Program-made: the position numbers and the translations under genes | From: Fimbriosthenelais zetlandica | Taxonomy: Eukaryota | DNA: 64,000 nt | Direction of reading: 5' to 3' | Assembly: GCA_977030845.1 (NCBI GenBank) | Contig: OZ365118.1 | Location: forward strand, 21,328,001-21,392,000 | Shown here: piece by piece, positions 48,801-59,071 of the stretch | Layout: each line of letters starts with the position of its first letter | Numbering within the stretch: position 1 is the first letter of the stretch | The notes under the pieces: generated by a model | Told to the model about the DNA's origin: nothing | Seen by the model: the letters and a program-made list of their open reading frames with translations, nothing else | Databases searched by the model: none

Positions 48801-51105
48801 CAATGGGAAGGTTGCTCTGCTCAGTTGCGCTCTTGGCTGACTTAAGTGGATTAGTGGGGGAGAGTGTTGAGAATATCACACTCCATAATCTAAATTAGCA
48901 CAAGTGGGGGAAACATTCCCAAGTGGAAACACATTTAGCAGACAATCACAATTAGTGATTTTGCCAGGCTGGTGACTGATGAACTGAGCCGGGGCTATCC
49001 CAGGCTGAGCCTGGAGCATGTTTAAATGTTACATTCTAATATGAACAGTTAAATTCTACAATGCTCGACTGTTACATCCCAATCAAGTGATGCTTTGTTA
49101 GAGATTTGAGATAAAAAAAAACCTTTCAGATAGGAAGGCCAATAGTGAGAGGCAATATCAGCTGAATTGGAAATCTTCCTCCAATGTCTAAAGCAGAAAT
49201 ACAATGACTCTCTCCATTTCGAACGGCAATAGTAAGCACAACTGTAGTCAGTCACAGATTTAGTTTACAAATGCTTTGCCCAAACATTTGGTGCAAGATT
49301 TAATCAATTAGATATCCCCCAAACGATGTCTGGGATTGAGAATCAAGACCTTACAGACATTGATTACAAGAAACAATCGGCAATCTGGCTGTCCTAGAAA
49401 CCCACCACCACCAGCTATAATTCAATTAACTATTTTGTTCACTGCATTCTGGTGTCGGTTGAAGCAGCTAACAGCATCTTAGCATGCCCGTGACATCCCC
49501 AGAGAGAGAAACTCATTCCACCGTCTCACAACCCACGGCGTGTCTGCCATTCACAAGGAATGGTCACACTTTGCCATACAGTAGGACTCCCAATACTTTT
49601 TTGGGAAATGAGTTCCACAACCATTTTGGTTTCAATGTATCATTTCAAAACAGAAATAAGCTTAAAACGTAGCTGTGCAAATTAACTAAAAACCATCATT
49701 TGCCCATACATTTTTTGACAAATTTTCAATTCCATGACTTCCAAGGCTTCTTAAATTTGTCCTGGGTTTTCCTGGGATCATGAATATACAGAGGATAGTT
49801 TGAAGTAGCTATACATTCATTTCCATGAGAAGAAGCCTTCACCTCATGGACCCTTGTCTATCTCACAGTAACAGACCAGGGTCTATGACATTTGCCTTTC
49901 AGCTCTGTGTAATGAAGTGTACTGGGCAGGGGATCTAATGTTTGCCACCTTTTGTAAGGCTTTTCCTATTCCTCGTGCCCTCGTGGAGGAGCACGAGTGA
50001 CTGCTTTTACGAGTGTTGCCTTTATGTGTTGCGCTTGAAGTCTGACGGTGGTTTTGAGGGATGCAGACAGGTATGAAGGTGTCCCAGGGCAAAGGTTGGA
50101 AAGACAGTCCCTAGCTATGAGCGCAATGATTGCCTCAGATGACACGACCTTTCCTCTGACTGGAGACAGGAGAGAGAAATCTGTTTGGATTAGCAAGGCG
50201 TGGGTGGAGCCAAATGACTCCTTTATTACCAGTGGCACCGGTGAAAGGATTGCCTCAAAGACATAACAAAACAGAGACATCTGTCTTCACAAATCCAATG
50301 ATTCCTCACCATGTGCTTAGAATTTTGATTTTCAACACAAATCAGTAAGTTTTAACACTGGTCTGTAGCTCTGCCATTACAAAAGTACAGACTCCATGAT
50401 TCAATGGTAGAGGTAATGGGGAAACATTTTGCTGTCTAGCAACAAGTAGTATGGTCTGGTTGGAGGGGGGGGGGTGGTATGAGGCCATCCTTCACCTGCC
50501 CTCTCCCCGCCATCTCACCATCTTTTTTCTCACACACCCTCAGCCCGCGGGGGTTCAAATTGTGCTCTCAGATCATCAAAACCGGGTCCCACAGTGGACC
50601 TCTCTCAAGAATAACAGGGGGCGGGGGTGGAATGATTTAGATCAAAATACTATAAGAACAGTCAAGCGACCCCTCCCAAGGCAAGGATCAGGCGTTGAGA
50701 GGAATGCCTTCATCTTTCTCCTCTTCCTTCCTTCCTTCTTACAGCCAGGAGGCAGTCTATGAGAGGCATTCAATGATTTACCAGGGTTTGATGGTGGCCG
50801 TCTTTTTGGACTGGTGCAGTACTTGCACTGCCGTCATGAACTCCCATTCAGTTCATTGCATGCCATGTCAGGACAATGGACAGGCTCATATATTTTACAC
50901 CAATTCACATTTACTGCACACCAGTCCCGGTTTCCTCTTGCAAAATGCACGAGGACCCGCAGTGCTTCGGAACGAGAGGGAAAAACTCGACCCTCATAAA
51001 TGTTTGACCGCGGCGGGGATGAAAAGCTGGCATGGAAGTTGTGCACGATATATCTAGGGGCGAGTGCTCATGAAATAACGGTAAAAAGCTAGTCTGCCAG
51101 TTTAT

Positions 51106-52347
51106 GGCGGTGGGGGCTGGGGTTGGTGGGGTGGGGTTGGGAGAGAGGGAGAGGCTGGATGGGGGGGGGGGGTGGGTAGAGAGGGAGAGGCTGGATGGAG
51201 GGAGAGTGGGGAGGGGTGGGGAGAGTGGGGAGGGGTGGAGAGAGAGGGAGAGGCTGGATGGTAGGAGAGTGGGGAGGGGTGGGGAGAGAGGGAGAGGCTG
51301 GATGGTAGGAGAGTGGGGAGGGGTGGGGAGAGTGGGGAGGGGTGGGGGCTGGGGTTGGTGGGGAGGGGTGGGGAGAGAGGGAGAGGCTGGATGGTAGGAG
51401 AGTGGGGAGGGGTGGGGAGAGAGGGAGAGGCTGGATGGTAGGAGAGTGGGGAGGGGTGGGGAGAGTGGGGAGGGGTGGGGGCTGGGGTTGGTGGGGAGGG
51501 GTGGAGAGAGAGGGAGAGGCTGGATGGTAGGAGAGTGGGGAGGGGTGGGGAGAGAGGGAGAGGCTGGATGGTAGGAGAGTGGGGAGGGGTGGGGAGAGTG
51601 GGGAGGGGTGGGGGCTGGGGTTGGTGGGGAGGGGTGGGGAGAGAGGGAGAGGCTGGATGGTAGGAGAGTGGGGAGGGGTGGGGAGAGAGGGAGAGGCTGG
51701 ATGGTAGGAGAGTGGGGAGGGGTGGGGAGAGTGGGGAGGGGTGGGGGCTGGGGTTGGTGGGGAGGGGTGGGGAGAGAGGGAGAGGCTGGATGGTAGGAGA
51801 GTGGGGAGGGGTGGGGAGAGAGGGAGAGGCTGGATGGTAGGAGAGTGGGGAGGGGTGGGGAGAGTGGGGAGGGGTGGGGGCTGGGGTTGGTGGGGAGGGG
51901 TGGGGAGAGAGGGAGAGGCTGGATGGTAGGAGAGTGGGGAGGGGTGGGGAGAGAGGGAGAGGCTGGATGGTAGGAGAGTGGGGAGGGGTGGGGAGAGAGG
52001 GAGAGGCTGGATGGTAGGAGAGTGGGGAGGGGTGGGGAGAGAGGGAGAGGCTGGATGGTAGGAGAGTGGGGAGGGGTGGGGAGAGTGGGGAGGGGTGGGG
52101 GCTGGGGTTGGTGGGGAGGGGTGGGGAGAGAGGGAGAGGCTGGATGGTAGGAGAGTGGGGAGGGGTGGGGAGAGAGGGAGAGGCTGGATGGTAGGAGAGT
52201 GGGGAGGGGTGGGGAGAGAGGGAGAGGCTGGATGGTAGGAGAGTGGGGAGGGGTGGGGAGAGAGGGAGAGGCTGGATGGTAGGAGAGTGGGGAGGGGTGG
52301 GGAGAGAGGGAGAGGCTGGATTGTAGGAGAGTGGGGAGGGGTGGGGG
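51106..52347. repeat. G-rich minisatellite: 44-45-bp units arranged in a 133-bp higher-order repeat
   Basis: Unit GAGAGAGGGAGAGGCTGGATGGTAGGAGAGTGGGGAGGGGTGGG and a variant with GGGGGCTGGGGTTGGTGGGG. Identical + ORFs recur every 133 bp (51342, 51475, 51608, 51741). Confidence 0.97.
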
Positions 52348-52797
52348 TATATATATATATAGGGAGCGTAGTGGTCCCAAGCACACCAAGACATTATTTG
52401 CCCCAACCAACAGCGATCCCAGTCTAAGTTAATTAAGGCTAGGAAAGCCCATGTCAAGCCTTGGCTTCCAACTTAACTCAATCTTACAGGTTGTCAGTCA
52501 AACTTACTATAAAATGCCAAGCTAGCCAGACTACTATAGGTATGTATATGGTGGGGAGGCTAGAGGGTGGAGGCTGAGGTGGGGGGTGGGGGGGGGGGGG
52601 GGCTCTATCAACCCCTCCACCCTGCCAATAGCAAATTACCTCCCTTCCTTTTATGACGTGAGCAGATCTATGCCCACACTTGCCATGCCTTCTGCCAATG
52701 AGAATGGGAAACTATCCATTAAGGGGTGGAGCTGGGGATCCATATAGGCGGGAGTGATGTTAGGTTTAATATCCCGGCATGATTTACACCTACTTAC

Positions 52798-55834: not shown

Positions 55835-55925
55835 CAAGGGACAATAGCAATGCGAAGAAAGCTTGGGGAATTGAACTGAAGACCTGTCATATTCAAGTCG
55901 ATCAATCTATGACTTGCGCCAAGGC
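55835..55925 (-). mobile_element. Degenerate tRNA-like SINE head
   Basis: Minus strand has A-box-like TGGCGCAAGT, B-box-like AGTTCAATTCCC, then TTGTCCCTTGGAG. Confidence 0.4.
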
Positions 55926-55995
55926 CTGACCACTTTATTATTTAGTATGTGACAGGTCTTGAATGGATATATTTCAACAGTAATACTTCGGTCCA

Positions 55996-56220
55996 CCTAT
56001 AAAGGTAGATCCATCACTAGGAATTTCCTGCCATGACGTCCTATATATGACGTAATAAAACCACCAGGATATGACGTCACGTCATATATGACGTCACTCA
56101 GGGCTGACGTGACGTCATTAAGGAGCGGCGTCCATTAATGGGAGCGTTTCACCCCGGGGTAAACAAGGGTGTCAGCGAGGCGTCACGCACTGTCACGGAC
56201 CGTCACAAAAGTGACGTGTG
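55996..56220. promoter_or_regulatory. Dense CRE (CREB/ATF) and CArG (SRF) module of the immediate-early type
   Basis: TGACGTCA at 56072, 56089 and 56110; TGACGTCC at 56034; TGACGTAA at 56048; CCTATAAAGG at 55996; CCATTAATGG at 56132; GGAATTTCC at 56020; GTAAACAA at about 56159. Confidence 0.75.
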
Positions 56221-56857
56221 AATCAATAGCTGACATATATACTGACGGCGCCTTAACAAACACAGGTGGATTTCAATCTATTCCCAGCTGATCCTGGAGA
56301 GAGGCGCCGGTCAATAATGGGCCCATTGCAGCTGGTTTCACGGCCAGTTTCTATTCTTTGAAGTGGGTGTTTCTTATAGGTTTTACTCAGGGAGGGAAGA
56401 GGGCTTCCAAGGACAGCTATATAATATATGCTATTTTAAAAAGAATACTTCATATATATATATATATATATTTAAATAAGACACCCATCTTATCATCGAC
56501 CAAAAAACTTGCTTCAGAAAAAGTGCTTCAGAATATTCATTTTGAAGCGCATGAAATTACTTTCCGACCAAGGAAGAAATATAAGATAGGATAGCCATAT
56601 TCTGAATATTACTTATGAAAAAACAATGTATAGTATATTAAGGTAAAATGGCTGGATATTTTAAGCACAAGCAGGAACAGTTATTTTGAAACAGAGAATA
56701 TTGTTTCAGCCTACACATATATATGTATTGACACATTATACCGGGCGGACCAAGTGCGCCAGCCATAAACAGATGTAGTGTGCAAACTCTGACTCGCCAT
56801 CATGTTTACCTAGCGGCCAAACCCTATAGACAATGTGATGATCAGCACAAAGTAATA

Positions 56858-57078
56858 GAGAGAGATGGAGAGAGGATGGAGAGGATGGGAGAGATGGAGA
56901 GAGAGAGGATGGGAGAGATGGAGAGAGAGGATGGGAGAGAGGAAGAGAGGAGAGGAGAGAGAACAGAGTCGGATAGAGGAGAGAGGAAGATGGAGAGAAA
57001 GAGGTAGAGAGAAGACTGTGAGTGGGAGAGAGGGAGATGGGAGAGATGAGAGAAAAAGAGATGGAGAGAGGAGAGACT
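56858..57078. repeat. GA-rich low-complexity polypurine tract
   Basis: GAGAGGATGGGAGAGATG-type units. Confidence 0.9.
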
Positions 57079-58953
57079 AAGATAGTTGTCAAGTATAACC
57101 ATGGGGCTGTATGTATATTGTGGGAGGAACACATCCATCCTGCCGCCTAATGACACTATCTCCTGTACGACTCACAGAGGAGCAAGTCTTATTACACGTC
57201 ACCCCGCCCACATGTCCCAGGTGAATGTTCTCTAAATATCTGCTGAAATACTGGCTAAACTGTTGCCATCTTGCGTTGAAAGTAGAAATCTAAATTCTAC
57301 AACATTGGTCATATTCTATACACAAAGTGACATCATAGAGATAAGAATTAGTTGTTGCATTCATGGCATCATAAATATATGAAATAAACAATCGAAATAC
57401 AATATTTTTCTGAAATATGTTTGACCAGGAATTTCCTGGTATTTTCCAAACCATAAATACACCCCACACTTCAAAGCATCTCTTCCATATCCAAAACCCA
57501 ATGAAAAGATGAAAGGAAAAGAACATGGCAAACCTTCGCGCAAAATTCCTAAATGTATTTTTTCGGGATTATGATCTACTTCGGGGGAAATAAAGAGAAT
57601 GGGAAAAACAGAAGCCTGGGGGTTTGTGTCTTTGTGTGGATCCTGATGCCCACTTCTGGAGATCATCAGTGAGAGCTCAACATCAGAACATGAAAGACAA
57701 GTGCTGTCACCTCGCGTGTCAAAACAGAACTAATAAGCTGGCGAGGGGGCAGACTAAACTTGTTAGAGCACTCGTCAAAACCAGGCGAGGATCGTGTATC
57801 AGGTGAGAGCCGTCAACATGATTAATATAGCCGGCTGTACAGGTATTAACACACGTCTGTACTGGCAATATTCTAGAATATTCAGCAAGAAATAATCTTT
57901 TATTAGAATACTCCATGTGAAATTATAGAAATTAAGAGATATAATAAAATTCCCTGATTTTAGGCGTTTTATCAAAATGTCCTGATTTCTTCCTGATGGG
58001 ATAAAGGTAAAGGATTTTCCCAGTTTTCTCACGACGGGTGGGAACGATGGTATATACAACCTAGTATATAAAGTAGTTAACATTCCATGGCAAATTAATC
58101 TATACATATGATATTACATGTTATCTAACCATATGAATTCATTTGTAGTGTTTAGTTTCATTGAACCTAGAAATTGTAATATATTGAGATTGAAGGCAGT
58201 ATTAAAGGTATACTTGTATAAAATATGATAAGGTGCCAGTAAGAACCTGAGCGTGGTAATGGCTAACATGTAAATCTATACAAATTTAACCTTCAAAGGA
58301 AAGACACGGCACAACATCCAAAGATAAGATAACCAAACCAAACTGTCAACAGAATATTGAACTACACAACTATAAGTTTAAGAGATACTATGCGGCAATG
58401 CTGGAATGGTACAGCACTGCCATCTAGAGCCAAATATGAAAATCATATTGATCCTCGATCACAGTGGATTCTCACGACTGGTGGCGATGGGGTGAACTGA
58501 GTCAAATCATCCACAAAAAACCTAGATAGAACAGAAGGGGAACCATTGACTGGGGGAAATAAACTATAAATAAGGCTGAAACTATGTGGAAAACCTAATA
58601 TACAGAGTGTGAAATTATACACACAACTAAAGTATACTTTAAGTTTGACTTTTAAAACTAGATTCCAAACAATATGTAGATGTACAACAATGTGATCAAG
58701 ACAACTAGTGAAAAAATATCCAAACAAACATATGATCATTACACAACCATCCTTCAATATATAGTTGTGAAATGGGTGCCAAAAAATGGCCAACAATAAT
58801 AAGAATCAAAAGGAATCAAGAAGAACAAAACAACAACAACGCAAATGGTAGGAAAGCTACCAACACATATTGAAAACCACTATGATATATACAAAGCTGT
58901 AGACAAAATGTTCACAACACTGAAGTAGAGGAAGTTGTGAGGGAGAATCTGAC

Positions 58954-58997
58954 CTGGCATTGTTGTTATTTCGGTTGTTGTCTCCTTGATGGACCAT
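58954..58997 (-). CDS. Candidate alternative first coding exon, MVHQGDNNRNNNNA, phase-2 donor
   Basis: Consensus Kozak CCCACCATGG; donor CAG|GTCAGA of moderate strength. Confidence 0.35.
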
Positions 58998-59033
58998 GGT
59001 GGGAGGAGGAGACGAGGAGCAGCCTGGTGTCAC

Positions 59034-59071
59034 CGGACCACCGACACACGCTGACACCTTCTCGATCCCAT
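59034..59071 (-). CDS. Candidate alternative first coding exon, MGSRRCQRVSVV (Gly2, Cys6, basic), phase-2 donor
   Basis: ATAATGG start; donor CCG|GTGACA, weak to moderate. Confidence 0.3.

What the first reader, a model, noticed from the sequence alone, without database searches (positions are those of the whole stretch)
55996..56220. Unusually dense stimulus-response module: five CRE-type sites flanked by two CArG boxes in about 150 bp
Seen: three perfect TGACGTCA (56072, 56089, 56110), two near-perfect sites (56034, 56048), further CGTCA half-sites, CArG boxes CCTATAAAGG (55996) and CCATTAATGG (56132), a kB-like GGAATTTCC (56020) and a FOX-type GTAAACAA. Established: CRE plus SRE is the logic of immediate-early genes such as c-fos and egr1. 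Inference: an activity-, cAMP- or Ca-inducible promoter or enhancer for one isoform, about 3.2 kb upstream of the Cys-rich first exon, or an unannotated TSS.
Basis: partly seen in the sequence, partly recalled or inferred. Interest (0 to 1): 0.75.

Follow-up and report, generated by a model that had tools for sequence, protein, structure and literature searches.

The report
Orphan CRE-site cluster CpG island
A real, single-copy 300-bp stretch packed with binding sites for CREB-type factors sits alone in a gene-poor region of an invertebrate (probably annelid) genome; it is probably a regulatory switch or orphan promoter, but no gene, transcript or conservation could be tied to it, and this genome holds many such clusters.

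Summary
All listed motifs are at the stated coordinates. The window's only three TGACGTCA lie within 46 bp. There are 14 TGACG/CGTCA pentamers in 214 bp, against at most 4 in 200 simulations.

The cluster is single-copy. It is not part of the neighbouring SINE fragment, a tandem array, a solo LTR or a known RNA gene. It is the only CpG-island-like peak (21 CpG per 300 bp, o/e about 1.1) in a roughly 125-kb CpG-depleted interval where I found no coding ORF.

Best reading (about 0.45): an orphan regulatory element, promoter or enhancer, bound by CREB/ATF and kept free of germline methylation. A CREB-type gene and MADS-box/SRF-type genes are present in the genome.

No RNA data could be obtained.

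The density is also less exceptional than it looked. Triple-TGACGTCA clusters match 1,505 times in this genome, against 2 for a control pattern. Most of those I could inspect are minisatellites or multi-copy elements, and one lies inside an ALG10 coding exon. A non-functional by-product therefore stays a serious rival (about 0.3).

Other first-reader notes of this scan describe CRE-rich orphan promoter-like modules elsewhere in this genome. I did not test them.

The parts
55882..56414 (.). CpG-island-like segment: at least 16 CpG per 300 bp, peak 21, o/e 1.06-1.19. It is the only such peak between C37:21304654 and 21430742.
55996..56005 (+). CCTATAAAGG. Fits the CArG pattern CC(A/T)6GG and is at the same time a perfect TATAAA box.
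56020..56028 (.). GGAATTTCC, a Rel/NF-kB-like nonamer. One of two in the window.
56034..56055 (.). Two variant CREs: TGACGTCC (56034) and TGACGTAA (56048).
56071..56118 (.). Core of the cluster: TGACGTCACGTCA (56072-56084), TGACGTCA (56089-56096) and TGACGTGACGTCA (56105-56117). The outer 14-nt blocks form a perfect inverted repeat.
   Evidence: (I2)
56132..56141 (.). CCATTAATGG, second CArG-pattern match with a TAAT-core palindrome. A 70%-similar 27-nt copy of its surroundings lies at 56304-56330.
   Evidence: (D2)
56159..56166 (+). GTAAACAA, a forkhead-type motif. Single match, weak evidence.
56181..56218 (.). Second sub-cluster of half-sites: CGTCAC, TGTCAC (a CpG-to-TpG variant), CGTCAC and GTGACGTG. 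It shows a 10-bp period over 2.6 copies.
56235..56247 (+). ATATATA TATA-like element followed by TGACG. If used, it predicts a plus-strand start near 56262-56275 (inference only).
55836..55954 (-). Head fragment of a tRNA-like SINE with at least 17 copies in the genome at 71-89% identity. It is a neighbour of the cluster, not part of it.

Best explanation
The segment at about 55990-56250 is a single-copy, homotypic cluster of cAMP-response-element-type bZIP sites. It holds three perfect TGACGTCA, two one-off variants and about eight further half-sites. These are embedded in a 300-500-bp CpG-rich island with TATA-like elements, two CC(A/T)6GG boxes and a Rel-like site.

Most likely it is a cis-regulatory element that germline methylation has spared. 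It would be either an orphan promoter, more probably firing rightwards from about 56265 into a non-coding transcript, or a distal enhancer in a gene-poor interval.

Proposed mechanism (inferred, not shown). Dimers of the genome's CREB/ATF-family bZIP proteins occupy the unmethylated palindromes. Their occupancy keeps the CpGs unmethylated. Signal-dependent phosphorylation of the kinase-inducible domain then recruits a co-activator, with SRF/MADS and Rel factors as possible co-inputs.

Shown here: the motifs, their enrichment, single-copy status, the CpG island in a CpG-depleted background, the presence of the factor genes, and the absence of nearby coding sequence.

Inferred: binding, hypomethylation, transcription, direction, inducibility and target.
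For: - Motif coordinates and enrichment.
- Single copy in the 447-Mb genome, both by 351-nt DNA search and by 29-mer with up to 3 mismatches.
- The flanking repeat family stops short of the cluster.
- No tandem period in the core, no solo-LTR signature beyond chance, no Rfam or tRNA match.
- Highest CpG density of the window: 21 per 300 bp against mean 5.1, sd 2.8. It is the only peak of at least 16 CpG per 300 bp in about 125 kb. The background there has CpG o/e 0.31-0.47 and a TpG+CpA excess of 1.17-1.27.
- Intact CpGs sit in the core, while the flanks hold CpG-decay-type variants: TGTCAC at 56191, CTGACAT at 56231, TGTCAT at 55885. This fits the known sensitivity of CREB binding to CpG methylation and the decay route TGACGTCA to TGATGTCA (PMC1796609, PMC9729108).
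- A CREB-type gene: pKID exon at C1:44734569 and bZIP exon at C1:44737348 on the same strand. MADS-box genes are present.
- In the 264 kb around the window, TGACGTCA occurs 12 times against 1.9 expected. Some of the nine isolated sites lie near CpG-rich segments or 5' exons, for example about 1.6 kb from the KLHL-type BTB exon, at 21430991 and a pair at 21416263/282.
- The plus direction has no poly(A) signal for 1.1 kb. The minus direction has two within 204 nt.
Against: - There is no transcript, accessibility, methylation or conservation evidence. No sequencing run was listed, and no related genome was reachable.
- No exon or ORF lies near the cluster, and no strong splice donor within 750 nt on either side. 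If it is a promoter, its product is unknown.
- Triple-CRE clusters are common in this genome: 1,505 matches against 2 for the control. Most of those I could inspect are minisatellites or multi-copy elements, so a cluster can arise here without being a gene switch.
- CpG richness could also reflect a recent origin instead of protection from methylation.
- Most of the isolated CREs in the flanks sit in ordinary low-CpG sequence, so the promoter association there is only partial.
- The CArG, kB and FOX calls are single motif matches, and two of them have alternative readings (TATA box, homeodomain site).
Confidence: 0.45

Rival explanations
1. Non-functional by-product. The cluster is one more output of whatever process fills this genome with TGACGTCA arrays: slippage or hairpin-driven expansion of palindromic units, decayed minisatellite, or a remnant of an extinct mobile element's promoter. 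Its CpGs are intact because it is young, not because it is used.
For: - 1,505 triple-CRE matches against 2 for the control.
- By my reading of the list, about 18 of the 24 distinct loci in the first 2.2 Mb of C1 are tandem arrays with diverse 15-30-bp units, and 3 are copies of one complex element.
- One cluster lies inside an ALG10 coding exon, so clusters do not imply promoters.
- Small internal duplications are visible here: ATATGACGTCAC twice 17 nt apart, a 14-nt perfect inverted repeat, and a 10-bp period at 56181.
- The single strand folds far better than shuffles, z = -5.6. This is the kind of structure that favours slippage.
Against: - The core shows no tandem period and no second copy.
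- It is the sole CpG island in about 125 kb.
- Several unrelated rare motifs co-occur with it.
- The decayed half-sites in the flanks suggest it is not brand new.
Confidence: 0.3
2. A regulatory element read mainly by other ACGT-core bZIP factors (ATF6/CREB3/XBP1-type stress factors, ATF4, PAR/E4BP4-type), not by the cAMP-CREB pathway.
For: Several sites are of the TGACGTG type (56105, 56211) or the TGACGTAA type (56048). By general knowledge these are preferred by ATF6/CREB3/XBP1-type and PAR/ATF-type dimers. The genome has at least 21 bZIP matches.
Against: Three perfect palindromic TGACGTCA, two of them with ATGACGTCA flanks, form the optimal CREB/ATF1 site. Nothing here discriminates between bZIP subfamilies.
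Confidence: 0.12
3. One reading: an inducible alternative promoter for a protein isoform whose Cys-rich first exon lies about 3 kb downstream (58937-59071).
For: A TATA-like element lies downstream of the CREs, and the plus direction is free of poly(A) signals for 1.1 kb.
Against: - The proposed exon has no ATG and no coding-type codon usage.
- There is no Pfam match.
- No recognisable downstream exons lie on the plus strand before a minus-strand DUF229-like gene.
Confidence: 0.05
4. Remnant of a viral or retroelement promoter/enhancer, such as a solo LTR or an integrated DNA-virus immediate-early enhancer.
For: CRE arrays combined with kB and SRE-like sites are typical of viral enhancers and some LTRs (PMC9729108 for CRE in IAP LTRs). 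A TATA box and an AATAAA (56054) are present.
Against: - No second copy in the genome.
- No TG...CA ends with target duplication beyond chance.
- No viral or transposon ORF in the window.
- No exact 29-mer in the viral contig collection.
Confidence: 0.05

Closest known systems
ICER P2 intronic promoter of the vertebrate CREM gene (cluster of four CREs next to a TATA box, immediate-early kinetics; PMC3941242)
   Same: A tight homotypic cluster of CRE sites within about 100 bp, with a TATA-like element nearby.
   Different: No bZIP exon lies anywhere on this chromosome piece, so this is not CREM/ICER. No downstream exon is known, and there are more sites here (5 full or near-full plus about 8 half-sites).
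c-fos / egr1-type immediate-early promoters (SRE/CArG plus CRE)
   Same: CC(A/T)6GG boxes and CREs co-occur within 150 bp.
   Different: No immediate-early gene or any coding exon lies within 26 kb. The 'CArG' boxes have other readings (TATA box, TAAT palindrome). Only about 12 loci in the genome combine two CREs with a CArG pattern within 30 nt, and about 7 of those matches are copies of one repeat.
Orphan CpG islands of vertebrates (unmethylated islands far from annotated promoters that act as alternative promoters or enhancers; PMC5927659, PMC8286816)
   Same: An isolated CpG-rich segment in a CpG-depleted background, far from genes, rich in methylation-sensitive factor sites.
   Different: It is much smaller (about 300-500 bp) and dominated by one motif. 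The animal is an invertebrate, and the methylation state was not measured.
Viral immediate-early enhancers and LTRs that exploit CRE sites (for example the CRE in mouse IAP LTRs, PMC9729108; cytomegalovirus major IE enhancer with CRE and NF-kB repeats, from general knowledge)
   Same: Dense CRE sites alongside a Rel-like site and a TATA box.
   Different: Single copy, no repeat ends, no viral genes nearby, and no match in viral contigs.
TGACGTCA-bearing minisatellites and multi-copy elements of this same genome
   Same: The same 8-mer at the same spacing range. One locus (C1:347522) even shares the order TGACGTCACGTCA ... TGACGTGACGTCA.
   Different: The window's core has no period and no second copy. 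The flanks of the look-alike locus and of a metagenome look-alike are unrelated.

Membership tests
CREB-regulated cAMP-response element cluster | Full palindromic TGACGTCA and/or CGTCA half-sites | tested here: met
   Three perfect sites, two one-off variants and 14 pentamers in 214 bp.
CREB-regulated cAMP-response element cluster | Central CpG unmethylated, since methylation blocks CREB binding | tested here: inconclusive
   Only indirect evidence: local CpG o/e 1.1-1.2 against 0.31-0.47 around it. No methylation data.
CREB-regulated cAMP-response element cluster | Sites within about 200 bp upstream of a transcription start with a TATA box | not testable with these tools
   TATA-like elements lie at 55998 and 56235, but no RNA run was listed.
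CREB-regulated cAMP-response element cluster | A CREB-family factor (kinase-inducible domain plus bZIP) encoded in the genome | tested here: met
   pKID at C1:44734569-44734631 (26.7 bits, over cut-off) lies 2.7 kb upstream of a bZIP_1 exon at C1:44737348 (56 bits), on the same strand.
CREB-regulated cAMP-response element cluster | Induction by cAMP or Ca2+ that depends on the sites | not testable with these tools
   Needs a reporter assay or expression data.
SRF serum-response element (CArG box) | CC(A/T)6GG | tested here: met
   55996 and 56132. These are 2 of only 5 in the window, but each has an alternative reading.
SRF serum-response element (CArG box) | SRF/MADS factor in the genome | tested here: met
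   SRF-TF domain matches at C1:35424470 (74 bits) and C11:53183402/53187902. SRF and MEF2 were not told apart.
Immediate-early gene promoter (fos/egr/ICER type) | An immediate-early gene directly downstream | tested here: not met
   No coding signal in the window, no bZIP on this chromosome piece, and the nearest coding exons are 26 and 89 kb away.
Transposable element or dispersed repeat | Multiple copies in the genome | tested here: not met
   Only a self-hit for the 351-nt query and for the 29-mer with up to 3 mismatches. The SINE fragment at 55836-55954 is separate. Very diverged copies cannot be excluded.
TGACGTCA minisatellite class of this genome | Head-to-tail repeat units each carrying the 8-mer | tested here: not met
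   Tandem Repeats Finder at minimum score 30 finds no array over 56030-56120, only a 10-bp period of 2.6 copies at 56181-56206.
Solo LTR or viral enhancer remnant | TG...CA ends with target-site duplication; viral or retroelement genes or relatives | tested here: not met
   Five 5-bp candidates, close to my rough chance estimate, none plausible. No Pfam hit. No exact match in viral contigs.

The most novel reading that the evidence does not exclude
The locus is one visible member of a lineage-specific, genome-wide class of TGACGTCA arrays: at least 1,505 triple matches, about 750 times the control. The class spans unrelated minisatellite units, multi-copy elements, unique orphan islands and even a coding exon.

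This would point to a dedicated process acting on this one palindrome. One candidate is a CRE-binding bZIP factor that marks recombination or minisatellite-generating hot spots, as the ATGACGT M26 site does in fission yeast. Another is a methylation-protected CREB platform that is repeatedly born and co-opted as orphan promoters.
Probability: 0.12. Interest if true: 0.7.

Novelty: new member of a known kind. Interest (0 to 1): 0.3.

Why it matters
If active, this would be a compact natural multi-CRE switch in a spiralian-type invertebrate, where signal-dependent transcription is little mapped. It would also be an example of an orphan CpG island outside vertebrates.

On its own, the locus is an unannotated candidate element with no known target. 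The broader point may matter more than this copy: dense TGACGTCA clusters are hundreds of times more frequent in this genome than a control pattern and occur in very different sequence contexts. That affects how every CRE-rich 'promoter-like' note in this genome should be read.

Tried and rejected
- **RNA evidence.** Two run searches listed nothing, one on the locus and one on a neighbouring UBE3A exon. Read laying could therefore not be used.
- **ICER/CREM idea.** No bZIP match on this chromosome piece.
- **Hidden gene.**
  - The 150 longest ORFs gave only one weak sub-cut-off DUF3960 hit far away.
  - A codon-usage scan found only repeats and the cluster itself.
  - Exact look-ups of two nearby ORFs found nothing on record.
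- **TE origin.**
  - Cluster and flank searches were run.
  - An alignment of the SINE copies shows they end before the cluster.
  - The solo-LTR test found nothing beyond chance.
- **RNA genes.** ARAGORN and Rfam were run at a permissive E-value on 6 kb and at gathering score on 64 kb. All were empty.
- **Virus origin.** No exact 29-mer in viral contigs.
- **Homology of look-alike clusters.** The only other genomic locus with the same motif order (C1:347522) and one metagenome contig share the motifs but not the flanks.
- **20-nt imperfect direct repeat around the island** (55970 / 56432). I judged it to be chance in AT-rich sequence.
- **Bacterial-type promoter/terminator scan**. Not relevant for an animal genome.
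- **CRE+CArG loci elsewhere.** Their gene context stays unknown.
- **Literature.** Searches for TGACGTCA minisatellites or annelid CRE clusters found nothing relevant.

Full report
**1. Observation**

These are:
- CCTATAAAGG at 55996
- GGAATTTCC at 56020
- TGACGTCC at 56034
- TGACGTAA at 56048
- TGACGTCA at 56072, 56089 and 56110
- CCATTAATGG at 56132
- GTAAACAA at 56159
- a second group of half-sites: CGTCAC at 56181 and 56201, GTGACGTG at 56211, TGACG at 56243

The three perfect octamers are the only ones in the 64-kb window. The shuffle mean is 0.53 and none of 100 shuffles reaches 3. Fourteen of the window's 54 TGACG/CGTCA pentamers lie in 214 bp. In 200 first-order Markov simulations of the window, no 214-bp stretch held more than 4.

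The pattern CC(A/T)6GG is not enriched in the window as a whole: 5 found against a shuffle mean of 8.6. Two of the five do bracket the CRE core. The Rel-like nonamer and the forkhead octamer are each one of two in the window.

The CRE enrichment is therefore beyond doubt. The accessory motifs are suggestive but were picked post hoc. Two of them have other readings. CCTATAAAGG contains a perfect TATAAA. CCATTAATGG is a TAAT-core palindrome.

**2. What kind of genome and neighbourhood**

The window is C37:21328001-21392000 of a 447-Mb assembly. CpG is depleted throughout, with o/e 0.2-0.6.

I fetched 100 kb on each side. The neighbouring genes there have long invertebrate-style exons:
- a UBE3A-like gene, whose AZUL domain matches human UBE3A at E about 2e-19
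- an ISWI-type SNF2 gene
- a GLIS-like zinc-finger gene
- a DUF229-like gene
- a KLHL-type BTB gene
- ALG11
- a copper ATPase

Earlier follow-up notes of this scan call the animal a marine invertebrate, probably an annelid. I did not verify that.

The window itself shows no sign of coding sequence:
- Its 150 longest ORFs gave only one weak, sub-cut-off Pfam match far from the cluster.
- A codon-usage scan trained on about 4,000 codons of the neighbouring genes found only tandem repeats and the CpG-rich cluster itself.
- No Rfam family or tRNA is present.

The nearest recognisable coding exons are a DUF229-like exon 26 kb to the right (minus strand) and a BTB exon 89 kb to the left (minus strand).

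**3. Is it a repeat?**

The cluster is single-copy. A 351-nt DNA search of the whole genome returned only itself. So did the central 29-mer with up to three mismatches.

The flanks do contain repeats:
- 55836-55954 is the head of a tRNA-like SINE on the minus strand, with at least 17 copies at 71-89% identity. In an alignment with eight copies, similarity ends at about 55935-55955, before the first motif.
- 56857-57076 is an AG-rich 20-22-bp tandem repeat with more than 100 related places.

Tandem Repeats Finder sees no array in the CRE core, only a 10-bp period of 2.6 copies at 56181-56206. A test for TG...CA ends with target duplications gave five 5-bp candidates. That is close to my rough chance estimate, and none is plausible. 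The viral contig collection holds no exact copy of the 29-mer.

**4. The CpG-island signal**

The cluster is the most CpG-dense part of the window: 21 CpG per 300 bp, o/e 1.06-1.19, against a window mean of 5.1 and sd of 2.8.

In the contiguous 264 kb, peaks of at least 16 CpG per 300 bp are common in the gene-bearing flanks. Between C37:21304654 and 21430742 the cluster is the only one. That interval has CpG o/e 0.31-0.47 and a TpG+CpA excess of 1.17-1.27, the footprint of long-term germline methylation.

Inside the core all ACGT centres are intact. The edges carry variants of the kind CpG decay produces: TGTCAC at 56191, CTGACAT at 56231, TGTCAT at 55885.

Published work shows that CpG methylation blocks CREB binding and that methylated CREs decay to TGATGTCA (PMC1796609, PMC9729108). 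The pattern fits a core that has been kept unmethylated. It equally fits a sequence that arose recently. I could not separate these two readings.

**5. The factors exist, and CREs are over-represented nearby**

A pKID exon (26.7 bits, over the cut-off) lies 2.7 kb upstream of a bZIP_1 exon on the same strand of C1. That is a CREB/CREM-type gene. MADS-box (SRF-TF) matches are present on C1 and C11.

In the 264 kb, TGACGTCA occurs 12 times against 1.9 expected from a first-order model. Some of the nine isolated sites lie near CpG-rich segments or 5' exons:
- one about 1.6 kb from the BTB exon, just beyond a CpG-rich peak
- a pair 19 nt apart to the right of the DUF229-like exons
- one within the CpG peak at 21430742-21431204

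Most of the isolated sites, however, sit in ordinary low-CpG sequence. This gives only modest support to a promoter-type role for CREs in this animal.

**6. The genome-wide picture changes the weight of 'unusually dense'**

The pattern TGACGTCA-N(1-30)-TGACGTCA-N(1-30)-TGACGTCA matches 1,505 times in this genome. The same pattern read backwards matches 2 times.

Only the first hundred or so matches are listed, all in the first 2.2 Mb of C1. By my reading they fall into about 24 loci:
- about 18 tandem arrays with many different 15-30-bp units, each carrying one octamer
- three copies of one complex element
- three aperiodic unique clusters

One of the unique clusters lies inside a coding exon of an ALG10-like gene. 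The Pfam DIE2_ALG10 match has E = 3e-78 and is continuous across the cluster.

Only one other locus shares the window's order TGACGTCACGTCA ... TGACGTGACGTCA, and its flanks are unrelated. A metagenome contig with the same motif order is also unrelated outside the motifs.

About 12 loci combine two CREs with a CC(A/T)6GG box within 30 nt. About seven of those matches are copies of one repeat.

Dense CRE clusters are thus a recurrent sequence class here. Most of those I could inspect are not obvious promoters. Other first-reader notes in this genome describe CRE-rich 'orphan promoter' modules without ORFs. I did not test them.

**7. Direction and product**

A TATA-like ATATATA at 56235 follows the CREs. 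It would place a plus-strand start near 56262-56275.

The plus direction has no AATAAA or ATTAAA for 1.1 kb. The minus direction has two within 204 nt. Neither direction has a strong splice donor within 750 nt, and no ORF follows.

If this is a promoter, its product is most likely a short non-coding transcript. All of this is inference.

**8. Verdict**

- **Best-supported reading (about 0.45):** an orphan, CpG-island-like CRE array that acts as a regulatory element, either promoter or enhancer, bound by CREB/ATF-type bZIP dimers.
- **Main rival (about 0.3):** a non-functional product of the process that spawns TGACGTCA arrays across this genome. Small internal duplications and the strong hairpin potential of the palindromes (z = -5.6) would fit that.

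As a kind of element it is a new, untested member of a known kind: multi-CRE regulatory modules and orphan CpG islands.

The more novel possibility is that the whole class reflects a dedicated, lineage-specific process acting on this palindrome. It is not excluded, but it rests on one pattern count and one control.

**Limits**

- No RNA, chromatin, methylation or cross-species data could be obtained.
- The 352 N at about 34.7 kb were left untouched.

Noticed in passing
Genome-wide; examples C1:84551, C1:124794-125023, C1:763966-764093, C1:2066879, C1:2080715: Triple-TGACGTCA clusters match 1,505 times in the genome, against 2 for the reversed control pattern. Many are minisatellites with unrelated 15-30-bp units, each holding one TGACGTCA.
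   Followed up: partly
L030 (C1:2133524-2135594), cluster at about 1000-1070, ORF 309-1259 on the minus strand: Three perfect TGACGTCA plus many half-sites lie inside a coding exon of an ALG10-like gene (Pfam DIE2_ALG10, E = 3e-78, no insertion relative to the profile). They encode ...LHDVTFLLVVLRRVMTSLRHDVRDVMRLVMTCVSDVW....
   Followed up: partly
L028 (C1:346472-348572), cluster at about 995-1100: The only other locus in the genome with the order TGACGTCACGTCA ... TGACGTGACGTCA. Like the window's cluster, it is followed by an (AT)n microsatellite. The flanks are otherwise unrelated.
   Followed up: partly
C21:30054685-30054738, C25:51693-51739, C25:33438950-33439012, C27:7118434-7118494, C11:42551693-42551742, C1:66142707-66142781: Unique loci that pair two TGACGTCA with classic CArG forms (CCTAATATGG, CCATATAAGG, CCTTATAAGG, CCAAATATGG, CCTTATATGG) within 30 nt. 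They are candidates for true immediate-early-type or TATA-proximal promoters. The sequence around them could not be fetched.
   Followed up: no
C11:48711387, C11:48726451, C13:31513863, C25:22877156, C25:22892592, C27:14878010, C27:15999328: A multi-copy element carrying a 25-bp unit TGACGTCAAAAACCCAT(T/A)AAAC(C/T)ACTC repeated twice. At least seven copies.
   Followed up: no
window 55836-55954 (minus strand): Head fragment of a tRNA-like SINE (GGGGAATTGAAC... T-arm-like box) with at least 17 copies at 71-89% identity. ARAGORN does not call it a tRNA.
   Followed up: yes
window 50911-52457: A G-rich tandem repeat of about 1.4 kb on the plus strand (GC 0.67, GC skew 0.89). It gives long spurious proline/serine-rich ORFs on the minus strand in all three frames.
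   Followed up: no
window 56857-57076: An AG-rich 20-22-bp tandem repeat with more than 100 related places across the genome.
   Followed up: partly
L041 (metagenome contig Ga0209365_1084443), 560-700: An environmental contig of unknown origin carries a similar dense CRE cluster with the same motif order but unrelated flanks. Such clusters therefore arise independently elsewhere.
   Followed up: partly
L029 (C1:546659-548690), 880-1050: A triple-CRE cluster lies next to two copies of CAAGATGGCGGCC (YY1-type motif, read on the minus strand). This looks like a housekeeping-type promoter pointing leftwards. No gene was identified.
   Followed up: partly
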